DNA of 64,000 nucleotides from Octopus sinensis (lineage: Eukaryota). Shown piece by piece: positions 3,754 through 28,302 of the stretch (its first letter is position 1; each line of letters starts with the position of its first letter). The position numbers and the translations under genes were made by a program. Where the stretch lies: the NCBI RefSeq assembly GCF_006345805.1, contig NC_043015.1, forward strand, positions 33,232,001-33,296,000, read 5' to 3'. The notes under the pieces were generated by a model. The model saw nothing but the letters and a program-made list of their open reading frames with translations, was not told where the DNA came from and did no database searches.

Positions 3754-3801
3754 ACTCCTGCTGTATGACTGCTTCGTATGATAAGATAGGTTCATCACCA
3801 C
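3754..3801 (-). CDS. dlg1: Dlg exon: end of HOOK (R-GDEPILSYEAVIQQE), 48 nt, phase 1-1
   Basis: LSYE.V motif; ttattttag| acceptor, T|GTAAGT donor. Confidence 0.93.
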
Positions 3802-5105
3802 CTAAAATAAAGATAGATAAAAGAAGGATTAGCAAGGAGACAATAGGAGTTAGAGAAATTAAATATTCAACAGCTAATTGTAGAGTCTGCTGCTACAATA
3901 ACCCACTAAAACATCAAATGTCTGATAGTCGTCGAGTCCCACATAATAACTAACCTGATGTATTTGACAGTCAATTGTAGGTCCTCACATAATAGTCCCT
4001 ACTAACCCACTAAGTACTCGTCACATAAACCACGAAATATTTCACTGACATTTGTAGGGTCTGCCATACGCAATACCCTTTATTAACTCATCAATAAACA
4101 GTCTAATCAATTTTAAGATACAGTTTAAATGTAATGATCTGTGATTTTTTTTTTCAGAAACTAGACGTAGATTATCAAATATGTGATGACAAACTCCCAC
4201 AGAGGATATTCTAAGGGTCAGCATAACGTCTCAGTAATCCTTATTTTCCTAATTTACTCATTTAGATGAGAATAAAGCCTCTTTAGCCTCAAACGGGCCC
4301 ACCATGGCTTTTGAGAAGCTGAAAATAGTTAAGACAGAGAAATGGATGAGATCCACAATTCTAGAATATTCCATCTTACTTCAGAATGTAAAAAAATGAA
4401 ACATGGGAAGGAAAAAAATTAACAACAACAAACATGCAAAAGTCGTCTACAACACAACAATGAGCAGCCAACATCAGCCATTCTTAACATTAACGTGTGC
4501 AGACACACACAATCACAAGCACACATATACAAGTACACACACACAGAATGCCATAATTGGGAAGCTGCAGTAATGCAAACCTGAAATTAAAAGAATTCCT
4601 TCACTAGCAGTTTCAATAAATATAATAGTTGCAACAAAATGAAATGAAATCACTTCAAAATGAATAACTATCTATCTCTCTATATATCTATATCTATACA
4701 CACACACATACAATATTGTGTAGGTAATAATATGAAATTATAAAATTTAATGAAGTTATTGCAACAAAAATGACAAAAAAAAATTTCACAGGAATTTTAG
4801 AAAGAATTCTAATGGCATGCAACAACATGAAAATATGGGCAGACGATGAAATCTTAGTGATTTGAATAGAATGTTGCCAGTTAAATGTTAATATCGCGAA
4901 TGGTTAATGGCATTTCAATGATTAGTGTGAGTAGTCAAGCAACAAGTTAGTCCTGGGATACCAGGAGAGGAGCATAAACATCTACATGTGTACACAATGA
5001 CAGGCAGAAAAGGGGGGAGGGAGTCGAACTGAAAAAAGAGGAGAATAGTTCGTGTACATGTAGACTGGATTGTGTTTATACATGGAATGATGCAGTCTTG
5101 CCCAG

Positions 5106-5139
<34 letters not shown>

Positions 5140-5829
5140 CCACGCACACAGCAGATACTTGTCCAAGTGCTGAGCAACGTGATGAAACCTGGAACCAAAT
5201 TGCTGGGAAACAAACTTTGCAACCACTCGATCATACCTGTGCTTCAGGCATTTACAACATGACACATACTACCTGACTGGGAGGTCAGATATGGAGTGTA
5301 TAGAATAAAGTGGTTTGCTTAGAGCTGTGGAAAAATGCCTGTAGTAGATTGACTCAGAAACTTTTATCCCAAATGATCCGTCTACTTTGTTGCAGATATA
5401 TATATACATACCTGTGATACTAACATGCAAATACAGATACTTGTAAGCACCAATTTATACATACATGCTTTATATATATATATGTATATATATATATGTA
5501 TATATATATTATAAATTACATCTGTAGATCACATTCACACACACAACATTTACATATACATTGTCTATATTGCTTTATTTACTTTATACATTAAAATATA
5601 CCAAATTATACATGGACATGGAAAGTGAAGCTGGATATAAAAAGAGAAAGGATAAAAAAAAACAACAGAAAGGCAAAAAACAAAATGAGAAAAGAAACAA
5701 AGAGAGAGGGACATACATAGAGAGAGAGAGGAGTAGGTCTAGATATGTGTAGGATGTACTGAGTTTTTTTTTTTCTGAACAAAATTTAGAAGGCCATAAA
5801 TGGAAGATGAAATAAATATAATGTTTCAA

Positions 5830-6560
5830 ATTTCTCTTTCAGGTGTCTTTCAAGGCAAATTCTAATCTGACAAAGAAAACGAAAAGCTGCTTTGCGTTCG
5901 TGGCTTTAGCTGCCAACTCTGTTGACTCAGAGATCACGAGCAGAACATGGATGGGTCCTTCATGTTCTGGGGTTCTGCATTGAGCAAGAGCCTGATAAGG
6001 GATTGTGTCGTTTGTGACCAATAAAAAGACACATTCTCAACAGTCATTCAATGTCAAGATGGCCAGATTTGTCCAACGGGTCCAGGACATCATCAGTAAC
6101 GATCCCAGTAGGTCGATGAGGGCCATCACTCTGAAGTAAAACCCAGGAAAATTTCGAGACCCAGTCAAAATGAATGCTAAACACACTCATCCTCTAGGTT
6201 CTCTAATGAACACTTTGACCAGAACCAGAAGGTGAACTAGAGTTGTGATAGGAAGCTCTATATGGACGCATAGAGGGGTCCATGATGATGCACACTGATC
6301 TGCCCTAGTTTCTAATAGTTCAGAGGATTATGAACAAGGAAGGGCCATGTAATGCCATTCACTTCCTTTCCAGAAGGATCTCAAGATAATGCTTCTACCT
6401 GCCATCAAGGTGCTGGACCCAGCAGTCAAGTACTGAATCAAGGAAGTGGATGGGTGCAAGCATATTTCAATGAGATTCTGCTCTCTCCCGCACCAGGGCC
6501 ACTAATGAGGCTGAGGGCAATTTTGTTGAACGGCCTTTCTACCATGCATTCAACAACCTC
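5830..6560 (+). mobile_element. Degraded Tc1/mariner (maT-like) transposase remnant
   Basis: Readable FVQRVQDIISNDPSRSMRAI segment typical of the N-terminal region; many stops and indels. Confidence 0.5.
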
Positions 6561-7749
6561 TTGCCATAGCACTCACCAGTTTTTACCCATCATCATTCCA
6601 TACACACCTCTCCAATGACATCCATTCCCTCCCATTGCAGCCTCGTAATCCAGACCACTTCATATATCTGATTGTTATGTCACGAAACATTGGCGAAATT
6701 CTTATTTTCAGCTTCACTCTTTGCTAAATATACTCAATGCCAAGCTTGTGTGTGTGTGTGTGTGTGTGTGTGAATATATATTTATTTGCACAGATATGTC
6801 ATTTGGTAGAGTGAATCGGCTTGTTAAAAAACAAAAGCATTTATTGATGTGATTCAAAACAAAGAGTGAAATTTATTGATTATATTGATTTGTCTGGGGA
6901 CCTCAAGTTTTGCCCCAGTGGCTTAACAAGCTGTTAAGGGGCAAAACCTAGGTGCCAGTCAAATTCATATAAATATATTGTAACTGAATTAAATAAAGAG
7001 TAAATATCTTTAACACATAGGTAAAAAGAGAGAGAGAGATGGGGGGGGGGAGAAGATAGAGAGAAAGAAGCATAACAGATACAGACTGATATAAAGTTAT
7101 ATAGACAGAATGACATATAAAGAGATGGAGAGAGAAATGTTGATGGATAGAGCAACATGTACAGATGGCTAGTTAGCTATAGAGACCGACAGACAGATAG
7201 AACGAAATATTGCTTGTGGTGAAGTTTAGCTGAGGTGATCAGACATTAGCTGGTGGTGATACAGACAATAAAAGATGGTATGTGCAGGAAGTGTCGCATG
7301 AAAGGTGAAGGATGACAATGGTAGCAGTGAGAATGGCAATAGGGTGACATTACTGTGATGGATGGAGTGGCTGGGGTCCCTTTCAACTTTTGCAGAAGAT
7401 TGGTCGTCAGAAGATATTTTGTAATTGTCTCTATCATATATTTAACTTTATAGTGTGGATGCATGTATATGTGTATAAAGTATCTATCTACCTAATGTGT
7501 GCATGTATATATATGTGTGTATGTATATGTATATATATATATACACACACACATCTTTCATCTTTCTCTTCACTATGCTTGTACTGACTATAGTTAAACT
7601 CTCACCTGGTGTTCAGATCTTGGACTGCAGAAATGGCAAGCTATTCCACTCTTGCTTAACACCAGAACAAAAACCATGACTACATTAACGAGCAGGTGAT
7701 ACCACAGGTTAGTGCAACTTTGGGCAGAAAACCTATAATTACTAACACA

Positions 7750-7965
7750 CACGAAGGTGTTGCTTCAACAAACACACGGCAAGAAGGAACCTGGTGCAGC
7801 CAGTCACCTGTCACAGGACGCAGATATTGGTAAAGAGATTCATCATAGGCTAGAATACATCAATAGAATCTTTGGTTGTCTGAAATGTGGATCCATGAAA
7901 TTGCATACTCTGAGACCCACAGCCAAACTGAATGCAGTTGTCATATCCAGTTTCTTTTGGGTTTC
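7750..7965 (+). mobile_element. RTE-type LINE RT remnant
   Basis: ORF 7757 reads LSQDADIGKEIHHRL..IFGCL..LRPTAKLNAVVISS, resembling the RTE post-RT region. Confidence 0.5.
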
Positions 7966-7979
7966 AAAGATACACATAC

Positions 7980-8352
7980 AGGTACAAGCATGGCTGTGTG
8001 GTTAAGGAGCTTGCTTTGCAACCATGTGGCATCAGGTTCAGTTCCACTCTATGGCCCCTTGGGTAAGCATCTTCTTCTATAGCCCTGGGCCGATTAATGC
8101 CTAGTGAATGAATTTGGTAGATGGAAACCTTTTGTGTGCATGCATTTGTTTGACCCCCACCTCCAATGCTTGACAACAGGTGTTAGTTTGTTTACATCCC
8201 CAAAGCTTAGTGGTTCAGCAAAAAGAAATAGATAGAATACCAGACTTAAAGAATAAAATCTTAAAAAAAAATGGGGAGCATTTTGTTTGACTAAACCTTT
8301 CAAAGCCATGCTCCAGCATGGCTGTTGTCTTACGACTGAAACGAGTAAAAGA
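7980..8352 (+). mobile_element. SINE family A copy
   Basis: GCATGGCTGTGTGGTTAAGGAGCTTGC...GGTTCAGTTCCACT...CAGCATGGCTG...GAAACGAGTAAAAGA. Confidence 0.8.
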
Positions 8353-8884
8353 AAAAAAGATGAAGATAAATGAGGTTTACAAAAATGCTTCATTAATGTA
8401 ATTGGTGATTGTAGTTGAATGACCATCACACGTGAAGACAGATCCTTTATGATGGAGCTTTCACAAAGCAGAAGCAAGTCTGTAGAAAGTTGCCAGAAGC
8501 AACCAACTCAGCACCTCTTTCCCAGGTGAGACAAATGCTCTCAGCCTGTGAGCAAACTCATATATTTGGCATTAGTGCAGATGGCCATATATGGCTTGAC
8601 AGAAGTTCGACCTGTGAGTGAGAAAGCGTGTATAATGCATGAGTGAATGAGAAAGCGTGTGTATGAATGTATTATATACCTACGCAGGGTACATATACTG
8701 TTAGATGTGTATATTATTTCAATATCAACTATATATTGATTTAAATATACACACCACCTGAGGAGGACAGGAATGTGATTTTGCAATATTCAAGCGTTTT
8801 GCAAAAGAATTAGAATATAAATGAAGTTAAATGGCAATAAGAAGGAATGAAAATCTAGGATAAGATAAAGTATATCGACAGCCA

Positions 8885-9170
8885 TAAAGACCCCCTTCGG
8901 TCATGGGATTGCACCCCGAATGATACCCACTGAAGCACAAGTCTGGGCAAGGTTGTTTATGGAAGACCAGCAGTCAGTCAACCGTGCGTACCAGCCTCCC
9001 CTCTCCGATACAGCTTGGCACCTGTGACATCACAACTCATTTCTACAGCTGAGTGAACTGGAGCAACATAAAATAAAGTGTCTTGCTCAAAGACACAACA
9101 GACAGCCCAATTCAGGAATTGAACTCACTATCTCATGATAGTGAGCCCAATACTCTAAACACTGAGCCAT
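8885..9170 (-). mobile_element. SINE family C (tRNA head + GAGCAAGACACTTTATT core)
   Basis: acagctgagtgaactggagcaac..ataaagtgtcttgctcaa..cactgagcc; shared with 22205-22520. Confidence 0.75.
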
Positions 9171-9686
9171 ATAGTTTTATGCACCTATTGACTGCCATAG
9201 TCTGAAGTAATTCCTCCGACCCAAGTCAAAATAACATCACAATCACATATAGATCCAATTTTAAAGCATTCGAACTTTAACATTCCATTATGTTAATGAG
9301 TGACTCTTGACGCCAACCAAATTAAATATTTGTTGGGTGGGGGTCTACAAAATATCCTTAATCCTGAACATAAAAAGAAAAAAAAAAATGTCCTTAAGCA
9401 AGCAATAATTTTGAGATTGTAAGGAAGAAGAAATATTGCATGTTGTGATGTGATGGTTTTCATGTCTTTCCCCAAAACATTTGTGAAGTGAAGTGGATAC
9501 AACAGGGAATTGAAACCACAAAGCTTACTTCTACTTCATTGCACAGCCTCTCCTCCACACATTCTCAGCAAGAGAGAGAGAGAAGGAGAAGCAAGAACAT
9601 GTGATGACCAAGAGATGTGTGAAGTGAAACTGCTACAACAGCAACTTAAGGCGAGGCCTGAGACACTCGGCTCACCAGGGTCTTAC

Positions 9687-9716
9687 CTCGACTGGATGGG
9701 ATCCGTCTTTTAAGGA
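9687..9716 (-). CDS. dlg1: Candidate alternative 30-nt Dlg microexon in HOOK (L-LKRRIPSSR), phase 1-1
   Basis: Long T tract ...ttttttttttctgtatatttgtag|TCCTTAAAAGACGGATCCCATCCAGTCGAG|GTAAGA; frame-preserving, no stop. Confidence 0.6.
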
Positions 9717-10184
9717 CTACAAATATACAGAAAAAAAAAAGCAAAACAAAAACAAATTTGTTGATGTTGTTGCTATTTTTTAATGTGAAAAGAAATTAAG
9801 AATGGGGTCAGGGTTAGAGTAGACCCTTAACAAAAGGGTTACCATGGCTAATTCTGAAATGGGTTGTGAAACTGTTATGAAGCTGTACGTTTGTGGAACC
9901 ACAAGACATTGAAAATGATTCCATGATTTTGGAGGTGTTAACATGGTAATCCTTAATCCTTCTTGCGACATCGGCAGAGAGAGAGAGAGAGAGAAAAGAG
10001 ATGATGAGAAGCAAGATAAGAGTGGCAGAGATGTAACAGAAGGAGAAGAAGGACAACAGACACCAGAGCCTGAGGCAAGCTTTACAGAAAAGGAAAATTA
10101 AATTAAATAAAAAGGAAAACAGAAAAGTAACAAAGACTTGTCCCATGAATGTTTTGGATAAACTTGAAGGAAGATATTACTTAC

Positions 10185-10220
10185 GAAGACTACCTTCCCT
10201 ACTATCACTGGCTAATCCAC
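10185..10220 (-). CDS. dlg1: Dlg 36-nt microexon in HOOK (R-GLASDSREGSL), phase 1-1; positional equivalent of SAP97 I5
   Basis: cattactacag| acceptor, perfect C|GTAAGT donor, frame-preserving, no stop; ASDS motif recalls I5 (NASDSESSY). Confidence 0.75.
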
Positions 10221-11717
10221 CTGTAGTAATGAGATAGGATCAAATTGATTGTAGGAGAGACAAATAGTTGGTTGTGTGTTAAAAGACAGAGTCAAAGAAA
10301 GAGAGAGCAGGATGAGAAGTTTTTACAGATGGTTAATAATAAAAATGAAAAAAAAGAACAAAAAAAATAAACAGAGAAAACAACAAAAATAAACAATAGT
10401 CATTCAGAAATATATAAATAGAATGATGGTTTTTAGATGGTTAGATTCTGGGTTTTTAATAAAGTTCCTAATGACAATTATTTAAATAAAATTTCTTATG
10501 AAGGTAAAAATTATTGATCATTGTCAACAGTGAATATAGCAATTTACAGAACATAATAACATTTAGCAATGTTAAATGGAGTTTTTTTTTTTAAAGAATG
10601 TGTAATGTGTGTAAACATATTGTTTGTTTTATCAATGTTTCTTGCATGTGATGATGGCATGCTGAATGAATTCCAGATTATATATAGAGACAAAACTATT
10701 TCACATGAAGACGTGTATTTTGACAGCAAGTAACATAATAATTAATAACAAATCATGAGGGGGGGGGGAGAGACAGACGCTATGGAAATGGTGATGCTAT
10801 TTTCCTTCAACACAAACCTCTTAACCAGTTCAATGAGCTGGTAAAAAAAAGGAAAGAAAACAAAAACATCTAGTTGGGAACATGTCACATACTTTTGTTA
10901 ACTTTAAAAGGTGTTTTACATGTTAACCAAATGTGGTAGAGAGAGAGAGAGAGAGAGTGTGTGTGTATAGAGAAAGCTACGTACATTCAGCCACAGAACT
11001 AAGCTAAATGTCTATTGATATGACATCTGTATCTTTTGACACCCAATATTTTCTGTCATGTTTAAGTGTAATTAGTGTTAATAATTCTACACGAATCATC
11101 ACTGATCTCATCCCAACCCCCCACAGCTCTCTAAATGGTTCAAATGAAATACACCTTTCATCTGATGATCTAATCTTAAAAACCCTGTATTCAGTGAAAT
11201 GAAGAAGTGTGTTCCAAACTTAATTAGTGCAGAAGGAATACTTTGAAGCCAGCAGTTTGAAGAAATAACGTTAATTTGGTTCACAGATCCATGAGAAATT
11301 GCACTTAAGTAGTTTTCCAGGCAGCTTATCATTCTGGAGGCAAGCAGGTAGCTCTCACCTCATGAGAATTCAGAAGGGTCTTAAATGCTTGATATGTCAC
11401 CAAGCCTTAAGTGATCTGCCATCCTCACACATTTTACTACCAGCAGAACACTGGAAAGACAAAACTGACATCAACCGTTTCCTATTACGCAGTCTCTTCA
11501 AACTCTAATTCCTGCAATATCACATATTTCTGTGGAAATTAACTATCTTAAGGATTTCTGTGTCTCACACTGACACTTAAGTCTCAAATTTGCAAACAGA
11601 ATAAGTACAGATGATTGCCAGTTATTTCATTGACCCTGGAAGAATGAAATGCATTGTCAGTTATGATGAAATAGGAGCACAGACAAATGATAGTTAATTA
11701 ATGATAGTTAATTAATG

Positions 11718-12045
11718 GTAATAAATCCTTTCTACTATAGGCACAAAGTCTTTGAGGAGGAGGAAGAGAGGACTAGTTGATTACATACACCCCAGTATGC
11801 AACTGGTACCTAATAATAATAACAATGGTAAACCTTTCTACTATAGGCACAAGGACTGAAGTTTTGGGGGAGGGGACTAGTTGATTACATTGACCCAGTA
11901 TGCAACTGGTACTTATTTAATCAACCCCGAAAGGATGAAAGGCAAAGTTAACCATGGCGGAATTTGAACTCGGAGTGTAGTGGCAGATGAAATACCGCTA
12001 AGTATTTCGCCCAGCATGCTAACAATTCTGCCAGCTCACCACTTC
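11718..12045 (-). mobile_element. SINE family B: truncated 3' copy (11718-11810) plus full copy (11811-12045) in tandem
   Basis: cctttctactataggcacaa..gactagttgattaca..cagtatgcaactggtac occurs twice; second copy continues to the head ..ctgccagctc. Confidence 0.8.
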
Positions 12046-13669
12046 AGCTTCTTGTCTGGACACAAAACTAGATTTACAGGAGTTGATACGGTTGATTGAT
12101 TGACTCAGAACGGATTAAAATGGGTTTTTTTAATTTTTATTTAAATCCTGAAATGGATCCCAAGGAACTAAACTGAAGCATTCGGTATGACACTCAACAG
12201 TCTTGGCAATGTGCAGTTAAATACATTTTCTCTTCCATAATAGCAGAGCAAGGAAAATGTAGTTTCATGTTTGTCTGACAGAGTTGAATATCTTCCCATT
12301 CAGAAATGTTAATATCCGAGAACTTAGGAACCTGAATAGTTAAGTAAACAATCCATTCGACATTATAATGCCAGGACTATTCAATATTGACACAGATTCA
12401 CAGAATCTGATTTTAGCCAGATCCACTGAAACCAGTTTTAACTATTATCCACAAAAATCAATTTCAACACAGAATCCACGAGACCAATCTTAGAAGTGAT
12501 CCACAGATTTTAAGAAATGATGGAGAGAGAATCCATCCAATTTCAGGATCTACCAATCAAAATCTGTTGGAAAAGAGCGTACAGACTTAAAGACAACATG
12601 CTAAGATTAAGAAGGAATTAAGTAAATATTTGTGAGAGAATCAGAGTGAAATGTGCATCAATGCATTGTTGTTCTTGCCATTGTTCAAGAAATTAAGAAA
12701 ACATTAAAAAGAAGAAGAGGAGGATTTATACATTAAGAATTCTGAAAAGGAAATGGAAAAATAGTAAGAATAGCAGTGGTGGTGGTGGTGGTAGTGGTAG
12801 TAGAAAATTGTGTAATACAAATATAAAATAACAATAAAAATGAAAATATTGAAGATTTAAGGTAAATTTTCATGGAAACACTAATCCGAAAGATAATTCT
12901 AATTTAAAAAGTAATATTAACCAGATGTAAAATGTTTGTCTGAGGCAAATTAATAAATTTGATTCCATCAAGATAAAAATGAGAGAAAATAAAATAAAAC
13001 AGAAAAAGCATCTTCTAATGTTGTTGTTTGCTATAAATGGCCAACATAATGGAAATGGTCAGCAAGAATTCTAACGGGGGGGGGGGGAGAGCAATTGAAT
13101 TCAAATGAATTGCAGCAGAGACAACATTGGTTAATAACGGCGGAATAGAATAATGTTCCAATAGAAAGATTAACATGTATCTACAACAATGAACTGGACA
13201 GAGAAAACAGAAGGTGATGGCAGAGACATGTAAAAGATATCCATCAATTTAGATACCAGTGATGCACTAGGGAAACAGTAAACAATGGTGTACTATAGAG
13301 ACAGCAGGTACCAGTGGTACACTATGGAGACAGCAGGCATTAGTGGTTCCTCTGTTCTAGAAATACATGTGGAGTGGCACCATCTAAGAATTAAGACTAG
13401 AATTTGCTCTCAATTGTTCACAGTAAGATACAATGCCTGCCTCCTCTCAGCTCTCCTCCTCTTCTTCGTCAATAATCTTTGACAAGTTGTTTTACAACTT
13501 GTCAAAGGTTGAGAGATTTTAGGAAATGACATTTGTATCTTTGAGGAACCTTTCCATTTGTAGTTGGAAACAGCAAAAACAATTGTGAACGTCTGCCAAG
13601 AGACCTAAGGCAAATCGTGATGAACATCACAACATCATAGCTTGACAGTAGCTCACATGCACAACATAA

Positions 13670-14310: not shown

Positions 14311-14500
14311 AAATTCATTCAACTGTATTCGAATGTGAGGTTAGATGACGATGAAAAGCAATTTAAGGTTTTGATGTCATCAAATTAACAAATGAAAATG
14401 AATGATGTGTATTCACTATAATATTCGTCTCCCCTCACATGCGTATGCAACCACCCCTCTCTCCCGGCTACATCTTTTCTTTTACTCACCTTCTTGTACA

Positions 14501-15492
14501 CAGAGATGCTCTGGCATCTCATCACCACCGTCTACATCTTCTTTCCCGCTACTCTCACCCATCCTTATATGAAACAGGGTAGCTTTGTATTTCCTCTACA
14601 ACAAGACACCTGGGCTGGTCCTTCCGTCACACTTTTACTTCTCAACACCTGGCTTACATCAGTTGCCCTTCTTTCCCTCTCAAACACTAAAAACTCCATT
14701 TTAGTAAAGGAAGCTCTTTCCTTTTTTCCTTCCTGCTGTTAGAACAAAAAAACCCACCCAGTACACCCTGTAAAGTGGTTGGTGTTAGTAAAGGGTATCC
14801 AGCAGTAAAAACCATGCCAAAGCTGACAGTGGAATCCAATGCTGCCCTGCAGCTCACCAGGTCCTGCCAACATGAAAAATGGACATATGAGGGGTAGGTG
14901 ATCGTGTTTGATGTAAAGCCAGCCCTGATCCAGTTATAACCACAGGTACTGCATGGTAGGTGGTTGTAGCTGTTGTTTTAGCCTCAGATCAGACCCAGAG
15001 ATGCTCTGGCATCTCATCACCACCGTCTACATCTTCTTTCCCGCTACTCTCACCCATCCTTATATGAAACAGGGTAGCTTTGTATTTCCTCTACAACAAG
15101 ACACCTGGGCTGGTCCTTCCGTCACACTTTTACTTCTCAACACCTGGCTTACATCAGTTGCCCTTCTTTCCCTCTCAAACACTAAAAACTCCATTTTAGT
15201 AAAGGAAGCTCTTTCCTTTTTTCCTTCCTGCTGTTAGAACAAAAAAACCCACCCAGTACACCCTGTAAAGTGGTTGGTGTTAGTAAAGGGTATCCAGCAG
15301 TAAAAACCATGCCAAAGCTGACAGTGGAATCCAATGCTGCCCTGCAGCTCACCAGGTCCTGCCAACATGAAAAATGGACATATGAGGGGTAGGTGATCGT
15401 GTTTGATGTAAAGCCAGCCCTGATCCAGTTATAACCACAGGTACTGCATGGTAGGTGGTTGTAGCTGTTGTTTTAGCCTCAGATCAGACCCA
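14501..15492 (+). repeat. Direct tandem duplication, period 495 bp, no differences seen by eye
   Basis: cagagatgctctggcatctc.. starts at 14501 and 14996; both copies end ..ctcagatcagacc; the ORF track shows the same peptide twice. Confidence 0.95.
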
Positions 15493-16093: not shown

Positions 16094-16114
16094 CTGGTTT
16101 CTTCTCAGGAGGAC
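16094..16114 (-). CDS. dlg1: Candidate alternative 21-nt Dlg microexon in HOOK (R-PPEKKP), phase 1-1
   Basis: ttttcttattgcatgcctcatag|GTCCTCCTGAGAAGAAACCAG|GTAACC; frame-preserving, no stop. Confidence 0.45.
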
Positions 16115-19100: not shown

Positions 19101-19737
19101 ACTGTCTGTTTCTGCTGGACTAACTGACACACAAACATATATGTACACACACAAGATTAACCAATTCTGCATCCTCTCACCATCATATGGCTTTCATTCT
19201 TGTTTTTGTTCATAGTAGTCATGGAATATTGGCCACTGAGAATCAGCTCAAAACAGCTAAAGCAATTTGTCTAGAATCTGTTGCATTAGTGCCATAATTA
19301 CATTTCATAATATACGAAAAAAAGAAAAAAAAAAGTGTGTGTGTGTGGGGGGGGCATGACTGAACTGAAAATTATTGCATAACAATGTGCCTGATATTAT
19401 GGATATCAATTTGATGTAAACTAAAACAGAGAAACGGTCCTTGTTAATGGGATATGAACTGTGTAACTGTAGTGGTTACATGGCAAATGGAGGCTACATG
19501 ATTAAAAAAACCAACGATGGTTAGTGAAGCATCTAACGACAAATTCTTACATGCCCAGTAAACAGCAGATAGTTGATTCCACACCTACCGTTAGTGAGCC
19601 ATTGGATGGGGGGGTGTTGTTTGTTTTTCTTTGAAATTTATGTTTATAATGTTTTATATCATTTACATTAAATTTTTCATAAACACGGAATCTACACAAG
19701 TATCTTTCCCCTGTGTCCCTACACAAGTACCTTCAAA

Positions 19738-19954
19738 CCGTTTAGCATACAGATTACTCTATTAAATGTAATTCTTATTTATCTAAGTGTGTTTTGAATT
19801 AATCAAGCATTATCTTGTAAATATGAGATTTCAATGATGTGATTGTTTATTTTTAGAAGGACATTGTAAGATAGGTGTGATATGCCAGATTTGGTCAGTT
19901 TGAGCAGAAAACAGAACACTTGGTCTGGATATGACCAGTTGAAATGCTAAAGGG
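19738..19954. mobile_element. piggyBac-like MITE (ends CCCTTTAGCATT...AATGCTAAAGGG, TTAA flank)
   Basis: Right end aatgctaaaggg|ttaa; left end degraded; same family at about 34150-34372, 43230-43445 and 62340-62547. Confidence 0.7.
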
Positions 19955-22204
19955 TTAATATGTGGTCACTACACAAATACTTCACTTCTGGGAGATACAC
20001 AAGTACTATCAGTATGTGGTTCCAAGAATGGGACCACTCATCTGTAGTCCCCATATAAATGTGCCTGTCGGGTGGATTTGAACTGGGCACTTTTGTTTCA
20101 TAGCATAAACATCACTTTTTCTACATGCAGACACAAGAGCAAATATAGTGGTGAGAAAAGGGTGCAGATTTGGTGTAGTTGAAAGTGGTTGGTGACAGTG
20201 ATGGTGGAAATGTGTGAGCATGAAGCGGGTACAACAGCACATGGCTAGAAGCAGGTTGACAATAATCTAGAAACAAACAGAGTAAAAACCTTGGCCAGGG
20301 CAATCGCCTTCTGCATGCAGAAAAAACAAGAAATCATATTGGTTAGCTTTTGGCGCAATAGAAATTGGTAAGGAAAACAAAGAAATAATAATAATAATAA
20401 TAACAACAACAACAACAATTTGTAATGTTGGCAGAGAGCCAGAAAATTTGGGCAGGAAGGAGATCGAGGAAATTGAGTCCAGTACATCAATGGTACTTTA
20501 TTGACTGCTGGAGGGATAAAAGGCTTGGTGAGTCTTGAAATAAGAAAGTAAAGGACATGACAAAATACCACAAGGTATTTTGTCTGACACTCTACCAATT
20601 CTACCAATCCACTGCCAAGTATATCAAAAATAATATTAATGGAATCCCAGAGATTATTCAAGAAACTCATTCATTAAAAGTGACTTTACAAAAAGATTGT
20701 CTAATTAACATTAATGCAGGAGAGACTTCTGAATATATTAAATGATAACATTTGTTACCATATCAGTGTACTCAAAGACAAGGAGACTGTAGTGAAGTCT
20801 AAAGCCAATTTTGAAAACCAAATAACCTATTGCGTATTAGCCCAAAAACAAAATGGAATAACAGCGCCTACGGCACAAGTTGAACTTATGATGCAACAGA
20901 CTGGGGTTCAATATCTATTCAGTTATTTACACATTACTAATGATTTCTAACATTAACCACAAGACCACAAATTATTAAGGACAGGAGTGGGCAAAACTGG
21001 TTAAATTGGCTTATAATAATAATAACAACAACAAGAATAATACGAATTGTTTTGTAATTATTGTTCCAAGTAATTACAAGTCATTGTTGCTTTGATGATT
21101 TTTCAGATCTCTTATAGCAACATATTGTAACATCTCCTTAAATGAACTGACCTAGAATTGTGGGTGGACTTCCTTGTTACTTCAACGAGTGAGGTTTTAA
21201 CAAAACATAGCTTAATAACAACCATCGTCTTATGGCTGCCTGTGTGCAGGGTCAAACCTGAACCCTTCCTGTAGTATCCTTTACCTCTTTGCCCTTTTGC
21301 CATTGAACTTATGAATGAAAGCATATTGGTGGCTGGTGCTTTCTGCAGAGACAGTCCCACTTTCTCAGTCTTCAAACTTGTACTGGTCTAATGCAACAAG
21401 TTCCATGAACCCAGTAATTAAAAGGATGTAGGATCTTTATAATGAGAAGCTAAAGAACTGAGGGACCTCATCTGCTCCGGGTTTGTTTAGGGTGTCAATA
21501 AATGACTCTCTTCCAGAGGCAACTTAGAATTTTAAACCCGGTAATATTACATTTACTAGTATAATCTAGTATTGTAACTCCAGTAGTATATTAAGTAGTA
21601 TAGACTAGTATTGAAACCAGAACAATAATACTTGAACTTGTATGTCTTATTATTCCTACTTCAATCAAGTTAGACTGAAATACAGAACCGACTGAGGCAA
21701 ACTGGAAACAGTTGCAGTGTGTGTGGTAAAATTTCATTGCAGAAGAATATAGTAAATGTTTTACACACAATTTAGGGGAAGAGAGAGAATATATTTAGAC
21801 TTATTGCGGAATTGTTAATGAAGAGAATAATTAATAAGTTTCAAACGTACCTTCTATAATCCAGAAAAGCAGCCAAAAGAAGAGGAGAGAAGATAATAAA
21901 TATTAATTCATTTTTCAAAGAATAAAAATAATATTAACACAAGGTTGCATGGTTTAGAGAAAAGCAACAATGAATTTCAAGAGACATTAGTAATGTGACT
22001 AGTTCTTTACTTTACCAATGCTGAAAGTCCTTAATGTTCTGAGTTCAAATCTTGCCAAAGTATTGTATCTGGGACATTTTTATCGAATCTCATGATTTTG
22101 AAAAACATTTGGGGAGGAGCTAAGTTGACTAAATTGGTCCCAGAGGGATCATAGAGTAAAGTGTATAAGGATGGACTTGAACCCATTAAGCAGTGGACTC
22201 TGTA

Positions 22205-22520
22205 ACAGGTAAAGACCCCCTTCGGTCATGAATGACCATGGGATTGCACCGAGTAAATTCCCCTCTGAGCCACAAGTCTGGGCAAGGTTGTTTATGGGTG
22301 GCCAGCAGTCGCCCATGCATACCAGCCTCCCCTCTCCATGCCACTGATGTTATCCAAGGGAAAGGCAAAGGCCGATACAGCTTGGCACCAGTGATGTTGC
22401 AATTCATTTCTACAGCTGAGTGAACTGGAGCAACATGAAATAGAGTGTCTTGCTCAAGAACACAACTCACAGCCTCATGATTGTGAGTCTGACACTTGAA
22501 CCACTGAGCCACACGCCTTC
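22205..22520 (-). mobile_element. SINE family C copy
   Basis: Same body as 8885-9170; head ..gaaccactgagccacacgcc. Confidence 0.8.
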
Positions 22521-25268
22521 ACAGATTCTGTAACAATATATATATTATATATTCATTTGTTCAATTTCTATGTCCATTATTCCATGCTGACAAGAAGTGC
22601 TTAGACAAAGCTTGTTGAGGTCAGATGCCCTTTCAACTGCAAACCTGTTTCCCACTAGTATGGGTGATTGAGACCAGATATCCATTTTTTTGTTTGTATT
22701 GTGTTAACGACAAGACACAAGATGTCAGTCACACAAATTCACACACACACACATCTGTGTGTGAGTGTATTAAGATATCCTTATTTGGAAGGTCTTTTGA
22801 AAATAACAGCATTTACTGATGGTGTTACCATTGAGTGAAATCAAATCTATTAAGATCAAGTTATCTGTGACATCACAATTGTTCTCCAACCAAATGGTTT
22901 TTGGTTCAGACTTACTGTGTAGCACTTCGGGTGAGTGTCTATTGCTATAACCCCGAGTTAACCAAAGCCTTGTGAGTGGATTTGAGAGACGTAAATTGAA
23001 AGAAGCCTATTGTATAAGTATGGGTATGTATGTTTGTGCCTCGTTGTCTTGCAAGTAAATGAATCGCATTTATTTCCAATATTCCACGAAACCAATTCTG
23101 GCCATGGGAAAATATTATTCTTGCTTGGAAACTGGTAAAGGTTGGTGACAGGAAAGGCATCTGGTCCTATAAAATTTGTTTCAACAAACTCCATCTATTC
23201 CATGCAAACATGGAAAAATGGACATTAAAATGGTGATGATTATACATACACACACACAATTCCATTCACAACAAAGCATTAGTTGGTCTAAGGGTATAGC
23301 AGAAAACACTTGCCCATGGTGCCATGTAGTGCAACCTGAACCCAAAGCCACATGGCTGCAAAGATGATTTCACAAGCACACATACACACACATTTATGTA
23401 GATCCTAAATTTAAATATCTATTAGTGAACTGTATTATGAATAATATATTATGTCAACATTACATTGTCTTTTATTTCCTTCCATAGTTTATGAACCAAT
23501 AACTGTTTTACAGAAAGACTATTGTTGTGTGTGTGTATCAAGCTTTGGACTCTGTTCCATTGTTTATAGTTTCCCTACAGGGATGTGGCTGAATTATACT
23601 ACACAAGCTACCAATCCCACAAGTATTTAGAAGAGGGAATAATTTGAGTGATCCTTTGCCTGTCCAAAGCATTTTCATAAGTCTGCCCTAAACATCCAAA
23701 CTCATTTTCAGGCTTTTAGTTATCCCTTGTTTCATATGTTCTAAAGCTTTCCTTTCATTAAGTCCCAAATTACTCAGGGTTTTGAAAAAAGAAGAAAAGA
23801 AAAAAAAAAGTGGGAATGTGAATCATATATTAAGCATGGCTGCCAGGAGAAAAATATCCTGTGTAGCACAAGTGACACACAGGACAGACAAAGGGTTAAA
23901 TTGACCCAGCCCTTGACTGATGCTTTATTATTGATTCTGTAATGATTTCCGACGCTAACTGACAGGGAGTGAGGGAGTTGGGGGTGGGGGAGGATGTAAT
24001 CAACTGAATAAAGTCTGTTAAATGATTGGAGAATATATTTTATCTTTCAGAGAAAGGTTGAAAGGGGAAAGTTGCTTCGGCAGGATTTGAACTCAGAATG
24101 TAGAAAAAACTAAACTAAACATTGCAAATTATTTACTCTGGAAATCTTACAAACTTTACATTTATGAAAAAAAAAATGTTTTTAACAGTAATTGTCCTAC
24201 AATTCTATGAATGTGTAACAAGCAAAACATTGCAACAAAGATTTCTACCTGTAGCAAGAAAACCCTATTTAATGTGTGTTTGTTTATGTGTGTGAGAGAG
24301 AGCAGTCTGTCTGAGTACATTTGTCTATATATGTATACATATATGTGTATGTATATATATATATATATAAATGTATATATATGTATACATATATGTCTTT
24401 ATGAATATATGTATACACGAATGTATATATGTATATAGTCTTCAACATATTTCTGCAACTTTTGCAGTTTTAAACTTAATAAACCACTGAGCACCACATA
24501 AAGTGCCACTTGTCTCTACCAAAATGGCTTTCTATCCCTACACAAAGTGCATCTTGTCCTCACTCATGGTACTAATCATCTCCAAACTATTAACCATCTG
24601 TTTCCCAAATGCACAAGGCCTATGGCTATAGCAGAGGACACTTAGTCAGTGCTGTGTAGTGGGTCTTATCTTGAAACCATATGGTTGCAAAGTGAGCATC
24701 TCAACCACAAAGCCATACCTGAGCCTTTTTTTGGTGTGTGTGTGTGTGAAAAGGTAATGATATCTACATGAGTGATTCCTAATTCAGCAAAGTACAAGTG
24801 GTAGTATAATTACTGGTATCATTGTCTTATTGAACAGTGATCCACTATCAGCACAATATATATCTAGTCTAATCCTGACCAACAATCATAACAACAGTTA
24901 CTAAAACCTAGGTCTTCACTGGCAATACTTCTTCACAGTTGTTTGAACTTCTAGAAATAGAAGCTAAATATATACATACTCCATCTGTTAATTAATAAAA
25001 GACACAGGTTTATATGATCCCTCGATATAATGAGTCATGAGGGCTGCTAGAGCAGGGTTGATGACCTGTGTGTGTTTGTGTGTGTGTGTATAAATATACA
25101 TATGTATATATAAATAACAACAGAGCTAACAGTGAAGGATTATCAATCCAGGCAAAATACTTTATAAGCTCTCTGTTGGCACACCCCAGGCTAACAATAT
25201 TGTTTAGACTAGTGAAGAACACTTGGAGTTCCTCACACCGGTCTGTCAGTCTGTGTGTGTGTGTGTGT

Positions 25269-25321
<53 letters not shown>

Positions 25322-25471
25322 TATATATATGTGCGTGTGTGAATGTATGTATGTATATGTACATATATTCAAGTGTTAGTTTGTCAATTAAAGAAAAGCG
25401 TACTGCAAATATGATGTCAAGTAATTATGTATTGAGAAAAAAAAGGGCAAGGCGGCACCAGCAGAACTTAC

Positions 25472-25580
25472 GTTCATCAGCGCTTACATCTTCACTACCG
25501 CTATGGTCCTTACTCTTCATAAACGGAAACTTTCGAGAGAAGGAGAAATTGCTTTTCCTTTTTTCATTTGCTGCTGCCAC
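25472..25580 (-). CDS. dlg1: Dlg exon: I3-like HOOK insert (VAAANEKRKSNFSFSRKFPFMKSKDHSGSEDVSADE), 109 nt, phase 0-1
   Basis: Contains the FSRKFPF motif of the SAP97 I3 / Drosophila Dlg insert; aattccag| acceptor, C|GTAAGT donor. Confidence 0.93.
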
Positions 25581-25824
25581 CTGGAATTTAAAAACACAGA
25601 AACCATCAAATATGACATTGACCACACCACACAAACGTACACATTGTTTAAGACCACCACAGACACTCATCACTCAACCAGTGATATTTTCTGAAGACAA
25701 CAAAATACATATTTAATTCTAACTTTGGGATCATTTCCCCCCCACCAAAAGAAATATACAAAACACAAAGACAACGAGGCACACCAGGAGGTGTGTATGT
25801 AAAGGGCTGAAGTCTTTCCCTTAC

Positions 25825-25888
25825 CTTATCATTCCCTTTGCCAGTAAACTTGACAATCTTCAACCGTGCCCGCTCTTTACGCTCGACT
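25825..25888 (-). CDS. dlg1: Dlg exon: HOOK (VERKERARLKIVKFTGKGNDK), 64 nt, phase 2-0
   Basis: Matches Dlg VE.KERARLK.VKF; ctcaacag| acceptor, AAG|GTAAGG donor. Confidence 0.95.
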
Positions 25889-27550
25889 CTGTTGAGCAAA
25901 AAAGATAAAAGACAATAAAAAAGCTGACGAGAAGTCAACAACAATATTTTAATTCAGAAAAAAGAAAAAAGGAAAAAGAAAAAAAGGGGGTTCTAAGTAT
26001 TGAATGTCAACAGAAATAATAACTAAGTATAGGAGAATTAGTTCTAATGAATAAATATCTTAATCGAAATAATTAATTGGTCAATTCTGTGTAATGTCTG
26101 GTTGACATTGATGACATCCGTGCTGGTCAGTTATTCAATGGTGTGAGTTTGGGTGTGACTATGCGATTAAAGAGCAGTCACAGACGGCTGACAGAATAGA
26201 AGAACGGACAGTGTAATAGGGTAAAGAGGTGTTCTGTAGATTTTACACCAAAGCTGCAGTGTGCCTCACATCAGGTGTCCAAAGCTCAGCAGGTAAGTTC
26301 AAAAGAGATAAACCTGCAAAACGGGGGAGGCACATTTCACTGTTGTGGGCAGTAAGATTAATGTAGAATTCAAAAGTATTTCAGTAGTTTAGGTGAAGAG
26401 AATAGAACAAGAAACCATTCCAATGACTAAGTGAAAATTTCAATGAGGTCCTGAAAACATAGTATTTTTATGGAGATTTACAGACACCAGTCAAATAATA
26501 TGGTCTTCTGTACAACTGAAGAATTTCCATATGTTTTAGTTTTGATGGAACATTGGTGCCCATTCCTGGTTGTTCCATTCATGTTGGAATGATTATGCTA
26601 CAGTTTAGGATAGGAAAAATAGTTCTGCAGGAACGATAGGGATTAAATATTTGTTACTTCTAAATCAATGCTGAAAAATAGACTAAAATAACCAAGCAGG
26701 GACAGGAGGACAAACAGACTTCACTGACAGAAAATGAGCCAGATATAGTTTGGTAGTGGGTTACTCTAGGAAACACTGGTTACTTACTCTTCTCAAGTAA
26801 GGGACCATGAAGTGGTCTGAAGTACAGGAAATCAAGAGAAAGAATTTTGTAGTTTACGAAATGAACAATAAACTTATCTATCTACACACAAAATATTTTA
26901 ACATCTTTTTTTTTTGTTAAAAGCCTTTGCTATTAGACTCAAATAAGATATGGATTTGTTTCAGCTACGTAAACTATGCTGTCTACTCCCATAAGATAAA
27001 CCATCAGTCACTCGTTGTTAACAGGTTCTTACTTTACAAATATCCATTACAGCAAGCTCTTCAACTTTGTTTGATAATGGCTTTAATCATTTACATTAAA
27101 TGTAAAACAGTCCAGAAAACTCACCAAATATTAGACATAATGTATTGAACAGAAAGATATACATTCACTGTTATCTTAATATCCAATTTCATTTAAAGAA
27201 TAAAATTTACATGAAAATAACTTTTATGAAACAATAGAAATCCAATTTAATAAAGGAGCATTTATTCTTGTATTGTTACAATAAGACAGAACTGGAAAGG
27301 AAACTGTATTAAAGTAAGTTTTACATTAAAAGAAGCCTATAAGCTTTTGGTTGATAGAAATATGAATAAAAGCCAACATATTTAACAATTAGAATAAATT
27401 AGCATTTTAATGTTTTTAATTGTTACTAATTATTATAATTATCATTGTTATTGTTACTATTAATGTTATTATTAGTATTATTAAAGTATTATTTTAGTTA
27501 AATATTTTTGACTGACTGATTTAGGTACTTTTGACAAGAATTATTTACAT

Positions 27551-27810
27551 CAATGGTTCCCAACCATTTTTTAAAATTATGGACCCCTGTGATTCTTATT
27601 TTACTTGGATGGACCCTCATAACTATCTGATGTTTAAAAAAAAATCTTATTATATTTTTATAATTAAATATTATAAGGAATTGTATAAAAATAATCATTA
27701 AAATATTTTATGTTTTGTAGAAGTATAATCGTTTTATGTCGCATAAACTTTCACAACAAAGTCTTATATGGACTCCCAAGGGCCCTATGGACCCCGGCTG
27801 AGAATGACTG
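27551..27810. mobile_element. hAT (Charlie-like) MITE
   Basis: Ends caatggttcccaacc ... ggctgagaatgactg; homologous to 58849-59078 in the opposite orientation. Confidence 0.6.
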
Positions 27811-27890
27811 ATTGAATACTCTGACAGACACAAGGAGAGGCTCAGTAACAAACAGAATCAAAAGAGAAAACAGTAAGAGAAGTGCTTTAC

Positions 27891-28067
27891 CTTCTTTTAC
27901 TTGGGATTATACCCATTCCTTCTTCTTCCCCTTCTGGGGTGATACGTTTGGCTTGCCACCACTCATCATCACTGGCATTGGTTACATGTAAGATGTCCCC
28001 ATATTTAAATGCTAAGCCTTTACTTGGCAATCCGCTGTCTTTTGTGGGATCATAATCAAACAAGGCC
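27891..28067 (-). CDS. dlg1: Dlg exon: SH3 domain ([60 protein letters not shown]), 177 nt, phase 2-2
   Basis: MAGUK SH3 signature ALFDY...DDEWWQA...G.IPSKRR (visible in ORF 27887..28285); gattgcag| acceptor, AG|GTAAAG donor. Confidence 0.97.
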
Positions 28068-28210
28068 CTGCAATCAAAAAAGAGAGAAAACAAAAGCAGT
28101 TGAGAAAAATGAGAGACAGATATCTTGGTTAATGTTGATGAAATGGGAAGAAGGTGGTGGTGTTGAGCCTTCAACAGGACAACAACAATCCATCGACAAA
28201 TTCCACTCAC

Positions 28211-28231
28211 AATAGCCATGTGTTCATGAAA
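28211..28231 (-). CDS. dlg1: Candidate alternative 21-nt Dlg microexon at the start of SH3 (S-FMNTWL-L), phase 2-2
   Basis: tgcatttaacattttacag|TTTCATGAACACATGGCTATT|GTGAGT; phase matches the host intron; no stop. Confidence 0.55.

Positions 28232-28265: not shown

Positions 28266-28302
<37 letters not shown>

What the first reader, a model, noticed from the sequence alone, without database searches (positions are those of the whole stretch)
3754..28231. Possible battery of unannotated microexons across the Dlg SH3-HOOK-GK module
Seen: about 21.7 kb of intron separates the I3-like exon from the LSYEAV exon, yet the core model needs only 36 coding nt there. I find further frame-preserving, stop-free, phase-matched microexon candidates: 21 nt at SH3, and 21, 21, 30 and 36 nt in HOOK, plus truncating ones. 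Established: vertebrate SAP97 HOOK inserts I2-I5 are alternatively spliced and control binding and localisation; bilaterian neural microexon programs (Srrm3/4, eMIC domain) use UGC motifs near the 3' splice site. Inference: a combinatorial, possibly neural, splice code for this synaptic scaffold in a cephalopod. Chance AG..GT pairs are common in AT-rich introns, so some candidates will be false.
Basis: partly seen in the sequence, partly recalled or inferred. Interest (0 to 1): 0.72.

Follow-up and report, generated by a model that had tools for sequence, protein, structure and literature searches.

The report
Octopus Dlg HOOK microexon cluster

Summary
The window carries the PDZ3-SH3-HOOK-GK part of an Octopus Dlg gene on the minus strand. 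There are 21,670 nt between the I3-like exon (FSRKFPF motif) and the LSYEAV exon, and a 36-nt exon lies inside that gap.

Five phase-1 cassette microexons sit there: a 3-nt exon AAG (21853-21851), A (21 nt), B (21 nt), C (36 nt) and D (30 nt). Combining them with the flanking window exons reproduces the SH3-to-GK sequence of 17 deposited Octopus Dlg proteins exactly. These include O. sinensis RefSeq isoforms X1-X11, which show seven different HOOK combinations.

The battery and its combinatorial use are therefore real, but they are not unannotated. The 3-nt exon was missed.

Sequence criteria alone do not beat chance: 932 phase-matched, stop-free AG..GT candidates against 812±34 in shuffles.

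The 21-nt "SH3" candidate (28231-28211) appears in no isoform of any of 232 Dlg-family proteins.

Neural (Srrm/eMIC) control is untested. The 3-nt exon, A and B have a pyrimidine tract followed by UGC before the acceptor, and A and B both carry UGCAUGC there. Exon C is the counterpart of vertebrate SAP97 insert I5.

The parts
27891..28067 (-). SH3 exon (177 nt): (R)ALFDYD...GIIPSKR(R). Intron phase 2 on both sides.
   Evidence: An exact substring of the Octopus Dlg proteins. Pfam SH3_1/SH3_2 hit on P0255.
25825..25888 (-). Exon VERKERARLKIVKFTGKGNDK (64 nt), the start of HOOK. Ends in phase 0.
25472..25580 (-). I3-like exon VAAANEKRKSNFSFSRKFPFMKSKDHSGSEDVSADE+C (109 nt). Donor GAAC|GTAAGT, ends in phase 1. 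Counterpart of vertebrate SAP97 insert I3 (KRKKNLFSRKFPFYKNKD).
21851..21853 (-). 3-nt microexon AAG (u3). C+AA gives Gln, and the final G starts the next codon. Context: tcttctctcctcttcttttggcTGCttttctggattatag|AAG|gtacgt. AG-exclusion zone 143 nt.
   Evidence: It is the only AG-A[AG]G-GY site between the I3-like exon and exon A. It is required to reproduce all 16 RefSeq/EukProt O. sinensis and O. bimaculoides isoforms exactly..
20290..20310 (-). Microexon A, 21 nt: (E/Q)GDCPGQ(G). Acceptor ttttttcTGCATGCag, weak donor AAG|gttttt.
   Evidence: Present in O. sinensis X1-5, X7 and X9-11, in O. bimaculoides and O. vulgaris, and in Argonauta hians with the identical peptide.
16094..16114 (-). Microexon B, 21 nt: (G)PPEKKP(G/V). 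Acceptor cttatTGCATGCctcatag, donor CAG|gtaacc.
   Evidence: Present in O. sinensis X1-3, X5 and X9-11, and in O. bimaculoides X1, X3 and X4.
10185..10220 (-). Microexon C, 36 nt: GLASDSREGSL(R). Counterpart of molluscan xxASDxExSY and vertebrate I5 ([13 protein letters not shown]). AG-exclusion zone 225 nt.
   Evidence: Skipped in O. sinensis X3, X5, X7 and X8.
9687..9716 (-). Microexon D, 30 nt: (V/L)LKRRIPSSR(G), a basic peptide. Acceptor tttttttttctgtatatttgtag, donor GAG|gtaaga. Seen only in isoform X3, where it replaces C.
3754..3801 (-). LSYEAV exon (48 nt): (R/G)GDEPILSYEAVIQQE. Phase 1 in and out.
3448..3549 (-). First guanylate-kinase exon: (L)[33 protein letters not shown].
   Evidence: Pfam Guanylate_kin hit on P0255.
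28211..28231 (-). It would replace the invariant Arg of YVRALFDY with SFMNTWLL. Unsupported; not counted as part of the system.

Best explanation
The region is the SH3-HOOK-GK part of an Octopus Dlg (discs large, SAP97-type MAGUK) gene.

Shown: between the I3-like exon and the LSYEAV exon lie five cassette microexons. These are u3 (3 nt), A (21 nt), B (21 nt), C (36 nt) and D (30 nt). All have a length divisible by three and all are flanked by phase-1 introns, so any subset can be included without changing the reading frame. The exons, their coordinates and their splice sites fit the deposited isoforms exactly, and at least seven combinations are annotated.

Inferred, protein level: splicing writes a variable 1-27-residue stretch into the disordered HOOK linker. 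It lies directly after the basic FSRKFPF (4.1/calmodulin-type) motif and directly before the LSYE strand that closes the SH3-GK supramodule. The inserts change linker length, charge and likely phosphorylation sites. A is Cys/Pro/Gly-rich, B is Pro/Lys-rich, C is Ser/acidic, and D is basic with an RxxS motif. This would tune SH3-GK intramolecular closure and partner binding, as the I2-I5 inserts do in vertebrate SAP97.

Inferred, regulation: the three smallest exons (u3, A, B) are recognised through a pyrimidine-tract-then-UGC enhancer of the Srrm/eMIC type. The UGCAUG motifs at A and B add Rbfox input.
For: - Exon map by translation and tblastn.
- A chimeric long query retrieved the Octopus Dlg proteins.
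- In-silico splicing of the window exons reproduces the SH3-to-GK sequence of 17 Octopus proteins exactly. The combinations are u3ABC, u3ABD, u3AC, u3AB, u3C, u3A and u3, plus A+C without u3 in the O. vulgaris model. All 32 possible combinations stay in frame.
- Canonical AG/GT at every exon.
- The five exons rank 4, 5, 7, 10 and 39 of 932 candidates on a rough splice-site matrix. All have AG-exclusion zones of at least 26 nt, against a background median of 11.
- The 3-nt exon is the unique fitting site.
- Argonauta hians models carry identical A and C peptides.
- Exon C aligns with the molluscan, vertebrate (I5) and Nematostella xxSDSExS segment at the same phase-1 slot.
- UGCAUGC precedes the acceptors of A and B. 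GCAUG within 30 nt upstream of an AG has a 3.4% background, so 2 of 5 gives a post hoc binomial P of about 0.01. u3 has UCUCUC...UGC.
- These motif architectures match published eMIC/SRRM3/4 codes (bioRxiv 10.1101/2024.09.17.613571; 10.1101/2021.02.24.432780).
- The roles of the vertebrate HOOK inserts are described in PMC9307800.
Against: - No RNA reads were examined. The evidence for inclusion and skipping is deposited model proteins (XP_ records), which are predictions built from RNA evidence that I could not inspect.
- D rests on one isoform.
- Skipping of u3 is seen only in non-RefSeq annotations, which may simply have missed a 3-nt exon.
- A has a weak donor (gttttt).
- UGC near an acceptor is not discriminating here: 26% of all AGs and 4 of 6 constitutive exons have it. 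C and D lack it.
- No orthologous cephalopod intron DNA could be fetched, so flank conservation is untested.
- The functional consequences for the protein are inferred from vertebrate work only.
- The species of the window was not determined. O. sinensis, O. vulgaris and O. bimaculoides encode identical protein across the compared SH3-to-GK segment.
Confidence: 0.85

Rival explanations
1. The candidates are chance AG..GT pairs in a long AT-rich intron, and no real extra exons exist beyond the 36-nt one.
For: The bare criterion yields 932 candidates against 812±34 in shuffles. The antisense strand gives as many high matrix scores.
Against: Five specific sites, and no others, reproduce 17 deposited Octopus isoforms exactly. 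Two independent RefSeq annotations (O. sinensis and O. bimaculoides) and the Argonauta models agree. The chance reading still stands for the SH3 candidate and for the other high-scoring sites at 14863-14858, 15358-15353, 8757-8755 and 22343-22323.
Confidence: 0.05
2. The microexons are real, but their combinations are splicing noise or gene-model inflation. One dominant form (u3+A+B+C) would carry the function, with no tissue code.
For: u3ABC is the HOOK form of 5 of 11 O. sinensis isoforms and 2 of 5 O. bimaculoides isoforms. D occurs once. A has a weak donor. Model pipelines can multiply combinations from few reads.
Against: The same skipping and inclusion patterns (AB, AC, A) appear in both Octopus annotations. 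The same slot is alternatively spliced in bivalves, abalone, fish and mammals. All the exons preserve frame, and the A and C peptides are identical in Argonauta.
Confidence: 0.2
3. Further unannotated microexons exist beyond the RefSeq set, including the reader's 21-nt exon just upstream of the SH3 exon (28231-28211).
For: The SH3 candidate has a 95-nt AG-exclusion zone (only 2.3% of AGs reach 90 nt), 71% pyrimidines, a UGC at -19 and a GTGAGT donor. With filters set from the real exons, the sense strand keeps 7 sites in the HOOK intron against 1 antisense, and 3 against 1 in the pre-SH3 intron.
Against: Among 232 Dlg-family proteins the junction residue between YV and ALFDY is always a single R. 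The inserted SFMNTWLL would replace that invariant Arg at the first SH3 strand. None of the 11 O. sinensis isoforms varies here. The filters were tuned post hoc. Two of the extra HOOK sites lie in a perfect tandem duplicate.
Confidence: 0.1

Closest known systems
RefSeq Octopus sinensis Dlg isoforms X1-X11 (XP_029648060-XP_029648069, XP_036367215) and O. bimaculoides XP_014780561-67 / XP_052830639
   Same: These are the same exons. The window's SH3-to-GK coding sequence, with the five microexons, is identical to these proteins in seven HOOK combinations.
   Different: Nothing differs at protein level. The records carry no functional or tissue description, and I found no paper describing these exons. 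The O. vulgaris and Argonauta annotations lack the 3-nt exon, B and D.
Vertebrate SAP97/DLG1 HOOK inserts I2, I3, I4, I5
   Same: Alternative cassette segments lie in the disordered linker between SH3 and GK. The I3-like exon (FSRKFPF) and exon C (ASDSxxxS, phase-1 slot just before R-G-x-E-x-x-LSYE) align with I3 and I5. In vertebrates these inserts control localisation and calmodulin/4.1 binding (PMC9307800, PMC2133382).
   Different: In octopus the I3-like exon is constitutive in all models. There is no I2 counterpart: the VERK-I3 intron is only 244 nt and holds no plausible candidate. A, B, D and the 3-nt exon resemble none of the vertebrate insert sequences seen in the retrieved proteins. 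No truncating I4-type exon is annotated.
Tiny alternative insertions at the same junction in other molluscs (bivalve/chiton ADE-PE(G), abalone ADE-Q-DGMTAVEE) and in fish DLG1 (SSY-PG-G)
   Same: The same phase-1 slot after ...S(A/C)DE, with RefSeq isoform pairs that carry or lack 3-6 extra nucleotides.
   Different: The sequence and length differ: 6 nt PE in bivalves, 3 nt Q in octopus. The genomic structure in those species was not examined. The fish PG could instead come from a tandem NAGNAG acceptor rather than a separate exon.
Bilaterian neural microexon programme (Srrm234/SRRM3/4 eMIC domain)
   Same: Exon sizes of 3-36 nt, a synaptic scaffold gene, frame preservation, long AG-exclusion zones (u3, C), a CU-rich tract followed by UGC close to the acceptor (u3, A, B) (papers).
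   Different: Neural specificity and eMIC dependence are untested. C and D lack the UGC. A has a weak rather than a strong donor. UGC is not enriched over local background.

Membership tests
Dlg-type MAGUK (SH3-HOOK-GK module) | SH3 domain followed by a guanylate-kinase-like domain, with PDZ domains upstream | tested here: met
   Pfam on P0255, which contains the window's exons verbatim: L27_1, three PDZ, SH3_1/SH3_2, Guanylate_kin. Window exons were mapped by tblastn.
Dlg-type MAGUK (SH3-HOOK-GK module) | HOOK linker with the basic FSRKFPF (I3-type) motif and an LSYE strand before GK | tested here: met
   KRKSNFSFSRKFPFMKSKD at 25580-25472 and GDEPILSYEAV at 3801-3754. Both align to vertebrate and insect Dlg.
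Alternatively spliced cassette microexons | Exon of at most 51 nt (3-30 nt in strict definitions) with canonical AG/GT borders | tested here: met
   3, 21, 21, 36 and 30 nt, all AG...GT.
Alternatively spliced cassette microexons | Both inclusion and skipping isoforms exist | tested here: met
   A, B, C and D are each present in some and absent in other O. sinensis RefSeq proteins. For the 3-nt exon, skipping is seen only in non-RefSeq models (O. vulgaris, Argonauta), so it is inconclusive for that exon.
Alternatively spliced cassette microexons | Direct transcript evidence (junction-spanning reads) | not testable with these tools
   No RNA-seq access. No cephalopod transcript-derived protein fragments were found in the protein collection.
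Srrm/eMIC-dependent neural microexon programme | UGC motif between the pyrimidine tract and the acceptor AG, CU-rich tract, long AG-exclusion zone | tested here: inconclusive
   UGC at -18 (u3), -9/-5 (A) and -14/-10 (B). None within 20 nt for C or D. The background is 26% of AGs, and 4 of 6 constitutive exons also have it. AG-exclusion zones are 143 nt (u3) and 225 nt (C) but 26-54 nt for A, B and D.
Srrm/eMIC-dependent neural microexon programme | Neural-enriched inclusion that depends on the eMIC domain of Srrm234 | not testable with these tools
   This needs tissue RNA-seq and perturbation.
Vertebrate SAP97 HOOK inserts (orthology of individual exons) | Same position, same intron phase and recognisable sequence similarity | tested here: met
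   This holds for the I3-like exon and for exon C (=I5). Compare ...[29 protein letters not shown] and the skipped form ...SDAD-R-GQEE in vertebrates with ...SADE-Q-G-GLASDSREGSL-R-GDEPILSYE and ...SADE-(Q-G)-GDEP in octopus. It is not met for A, B, D and u3, which have no vertebrate counterpart among the retrieved sequences.

The most novel reading that the evidence does not exclude
The phase-1 junction between the I3-type exon and the LSYE exon of Dlg may be an ancient hotspot where tiny exons are repeatedly born: 3 nt in octopus and abalone, 6 nt in bivalves and chitons, and 21-39 nt cassettes from cnidarians to vertebrates. In octopus the three smallest exons (u3, A, B) would be switched on in neurons by Srrm234-eMIC acting on Py-UGC elements, with Rbfox input at the UGCAUGC of A and B. 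A single Dlg gene would then produce a neuron-type-specific family of postsynaptic scaffolds. Further exons, such as the 21-nt one before the SH3 exon, may remain unannotated.
Probability: 0.2. Interest if true: 0.55.

Novelty: already known. Interest (0 to 1): 0.3.

Why it matters
Octopus has the same small number of Dlg genes as Aplysia, where vertebrates have four paralogues. PMC9282427 suggested that alternative transcripts might supply scaffold diversity instead, but analysed alternative transcripts only for unc13. The HOOK microexon cluster is a concrete, already annotated substrate for that idea: at least seven linker variants at the exact place where vertebrate SAP97 inserts control 4.1/calmodulin binding and localisation. 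For the scan, this case shows that a reader working from raw sequence can recover true microexons. It also shows that the criterion used has a false-positive background of hundreds per intron, and that 'unannotated' must be checked against RefSeq isoforms.

Tried and rejected
1. First protein search with a 262-aa SH3-GK query. It returned no cephalopod, and every hit was 457 aa or shorter. The tool appears to keep only proteins up to about 1.75 times the query length.
2. Third protein search with a 153-aa HOOK query carrying all microexons, aimed at transcript-derived cephalopod fragments or squid and cuttlefish orthologues. It found none; the best hit was 51% identical.
3. Fetching orthologous genomic DNA for intron conservation. 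The Argonauta gene spans 290 kb, so no DNA was returned. Two window ORFs over the SH3 exon are not on record. Intron conservation therefore stays untested.
4. A direct I3-to-LSYE splice (C+GT = Arg) as the basic form. It is in frame and is seen in one Argonauta model, but every RefSeq Octopus isoform has Q+G/E instead. This led to the 3-nt exon. An alternative-donor or NAGNAG explanation for the extra 3 nt was rejected, because neither the I3 donor nor the downstream acceptors contain the needed bases.
5. Splice-site weight matrices as a discriminator. They are useful for ranking but not above the antisense control.
6. Supplementary tables of a 2026 preprint that includes O. bimaculoides tissue-specific exons. 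They are not held.
7. Pfam on the intronic ORFs 39239-39907 and 14690-14977. No hits.


Full report
**What is in the window.**
Motif scans and translations show a Dlg (discs large) gene on the minus strand. tblastn with molluscan Dlg proteins, together with reading of the splice sites, gives the following exons.

| Exon | Window coordinates (minus strand) | Notes |
|---|---|---|
| PDZ3 end | 61807-61705 | |
| [10 protein letters not shown]...LYV | 42536-42434 | |
| SH3 | 28067-27891 | intron phase 2 on both sides |
| VERKERARLKIVKFTGKGNDK | 25888-25825 | |
| I3-like, ...KRKSNFSFSRKFPFMKSKDHSGSEDVSADE | 25580-25472 | donor GAAC\|GTAAGT, phase 1 |
| LSYEAV | 3801-3754 | phase 1 in and out |
| GK exons | 3549-3448, 1467-1295, 798-689 | |

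**Checking the observation against chance.**
In that intron, AG..GT pairs of 3-60 nt that keep phase 1 and contain no stop number 932. Fifty dinucleotide-preserving shuffles give 812±34. There are 59 candidates of 21 nt, 59 of 30 nt and 55 of 36 nt. A rough donor-plus-acceptor weight matrix, built from generic metazoan consensus frequencies that I supplied from memory, gives as many high scorers on the antisense strand as on the sense strand.

**External evidence.**
A first protein search with the SH3-GK core returned only non-cephalopod proteins of at most 457 aa. It did show that other molluscs carry a short extra peptide between ...SADE-R and R-GDEPILSYE: TAESEASF, NPPSDNESNS or SVASDNDTSY. 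Scanning the intron for such a peptide found GLASDSREGSL at 10220-10185.

A longer chimeric query then retrieved Octopus sinensis Dlg. Listing the two clusters gave the following proteins:
- O. sinensis RefSeq isoforms X1-X11;
- five O. bimaculoides isoforms, plus XP_052830639;
- one O. vulgaris model;
- two Argonauta hians models.

After ...SGSEDVSADE, the HOOK regions read:
- Q-EGDCPGQG-PPEKKPG-GLASDSREGSL-R-GDEP (X1);
- ...PPEKKP-VLKRRIPSSRG-GDEP (X3);
- shorter versions lacking one or more of these blocks.

**Mapping the isoform blocks to the window.**

| Microexon | Peptide | Length | Window coordinates |
|---|---|---|---|
| A | (E/Q)GDCPGQ(G) | 21 nt | 20310-20290 |
| B | (G)PPEKKP(G/V) | 21 nt | 16114-16094 |
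| C | GLASDSREGSL(R) | 36 nt | 10220-10185 |
| D | (V/L)LKRRIPSSR(G) | 30 nt | 9716-9687 |

All four have AG/GT borders. The RefSeq proteins also need three extra bases, A[AG]G, directly after the last C of the I3-like exon, whichever exon follows: ADE-Q-G-GDEP, ADE-Q-G-GLASD, ADE-Q-E-GDC. Neither the I3 donor nor any downstream acceptor can supply them. The only AG-A[AG]G-GY site between the I3-like exon and exon A is tcttctctcctcttcttttggctgcttttctggattatag|AAG|gtacgt at 21853-21851, a 3-nt microexon.

Splicing SH3 + VERK + I3 + {u3, A, B, C, D subsets} + LSYE + GK1 in silico reproduces 17 Octopus proteins exactly over that segment. The combinations are:
- u3ABC (O. sinensis X1, X2, X9-11; O. 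bimaculoides X1, X3);
- u3ABD (X3);
- u3AC (X4; O. bimaculoides X2);
- u3AB (X5; O. bimaculoides X4);
- u3C (X6);
- u3A (X7; O. bimaculoides X6);
- u3 alone (X8);
- A+C without u3 in the O. vulgaris model.

All 32 possible combinations stay in frame. They are annotated, however, not unannotated.

**How the real exons look.**
On the rough matrix the five exons rank 4 (D), 5 (B), 7 (u3), 10 (C) and 39 (A) of 932. A has a weak donor, AAG|gttttt. All have AG-exclusion zones of at least 26 nt. Those of u3 (143 nt) and C (225 nt) are far above the background, where the median is 11 nt and only 2.3% of AGs reach 90 nt.

A and B both carry UGCAUGC directly in front of the acceptor: ttttttcTGCATGCag and cttatTGCATGCctcatag. 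GCAUG within 30 nt upstream of an AG occurs at 3.4% of AGs in this intron, so two of five gives a post hoc P of about 0.01. u3 has a UCUCUC-rich tract followed by UGC at -18.

This arrangement, a pyrimidine or CU-rich tract followed by UGC close to the 3' splice site with a long AG-exclusion zone, is the published signature of SRRM3/4/eMIC-dependent microexons. UGCAUG is the Rbfox motif (my own knowledge). But UGC within 20 nt of an AG is common here: 26% of all AGs and 4 of 6 constitutive exons have it. C and D also lack it. The neural-code inference is compatible with the sequence but not demonstrated.

**Comparison with other animals.**
Exon C occupies the same phase-1 slot as two related segments:
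- the molluscan xxSDxExSY peptide;
- vertebrate DLG1 [13 protein letters not shown]. Isoform pairs read ...[29 protein letters not shown] and ...[15 protein letters not shown], and I equate this segment with the segment called I5 in the SAP97 literature.

A related segment is present in Nematostella. The I3-like exon matches vertebrate I3, KRKKNLFSRKFPFYKNKD. PMC9307800 summarises I2, I3, I4 (brain-specific, truncating) and I5, and their effects on localisation and calmodulin response.

Bivalves and a chiton have RefSeq isoform pairs ADE-PEG... versus ADE-R.... Abalone has ADE-Q-DGMTAVEE-G.... Fish DLG1 has SSY-PG-G versus SSY-R-G. Tiny insertions therefore recur at this junction. A, B and D have no counterpart outside octopods in the sequences I retrieved. 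The A and C peptides are identical in Argonauta.

**The SH3 candidate.**
At the finding's upper coordinate lies attttacag|TTTCATGAACACATGGCTATT|gtgagtgg (28231-28211), 143 nt upstream of the SH3 exon. It is in phase and stop-free. It has a 95-nt AG-exclusion zone and a UGC at -19, so it is not a poor candidate.

It would replace the Arg of YVRALFDY with SFMNTWLL. In 232 Dlg-family proteins, many of them RefSeq isoform sets, that junction is always a single R, and none has an insertion at the SH3-VERK junction either. No Octopus isoform varies there. I rate it at about 10%.

Other sites that pass filters tuned on the real exons are 14863-14858 and 15358-15353 (6 nt, inside a perfect 495-bp tandem duplicate), 8757-8755 (3 nt) and 22343-22323 (21 nt). 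The antisense control passes 1 site where the sense strand passes 7, three of which are the real exons. These remain untested.

**Mechanism.**
Shown: five phase-1, length-divisible-by-three cassette exons with canonical splice sites, and at least seven annotated combinations.

Inferred:
- The inserts lengthen and re-charge the disordered HOOK linker between the basic FSRKFPF motif and the LSYE strand.
- This modulates SH3-GK closure and partner binding, as in SAP97.
- u3, A and B are recognised through Py-UGC enhancers (Srrm/eMIC), with possible Rbfox input.

**Novelty and limits.**
The exons are implied by public RefSeq records, so the finding is already known at annotation level. I found no paper describing them. 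PMC9282427 explicitly left Dlg alternative transcripts in Octopus unexamined. I could reach neither RNA data nor orthologous intron DNA. The species of the window is not determined, because the three Octopus species encode identical protein across the compared SH3-to-GK segment.

Noticed in passing
window 14501-15492: A perfect (100% identical) 495-bp x 2.0 tandem duplication lies in the intron between microexons B and C. It is either a very recent duplication or an assembly artefact. Each copy holds a high-scoring 6-nt candidate exon, ttggcag|GACCTG|gtgagc (14863-14858 and 15358-15353).
   Followed up: partly
window 25487-25488 (minus strand): A second, consensus-like donor GAT|GTAAGC lies inside the I3-like exon, 16 nt upstream of the donor actually used. 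It is in phase 0, so using it would shift the frame with all downstream phase-1 exons. It is seen in no isoform.
   Followed up: partly
window about 9020-9085 and 22389-22450 (minus strand): Two copies of an interspersed repeat give near-identical ORF fragments (HTLF[YH]VAPVHSAVEM...).
   Followed up: no
proteins P0123-P0137, P0142, P0163 (not in the window): RefSeq isoform pairs in scallops, oysters, a chiton, abalone and fish differ by 3-6 nt at the same phase-1 junction: ADE-PEG versus ADE-R, ADE-Q..., SSY-PG-G versus SSY-R-G. Tiny insertions recur at this slot across animals.
   Followed up: partly
window 39239-39907 (+): A 222-aa ORF lies in the intron upstream of the SH3 exon. By eye it resembles the C-terminal part of a LINE-type reverse transcriptase ORF. 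It has no Pfam hit.
   Followed up: partly
window 28068-42433 and 42537-61704: Very long introns (14.4 kb and 19.2 kb) separate the PDZ3 end, the pre-SH3 exon and the SH3 exon. The Argonauta orthologue spans 290 kb in total.
   Followed up: no
tool behaviour: the search for homologous proteins returned only proteins up to about 1.75 times the query length (457/262, 266/153). Full-length orthologues of a multi-exon gene are therefore missed unless the query is made long.
   Followed up: yes
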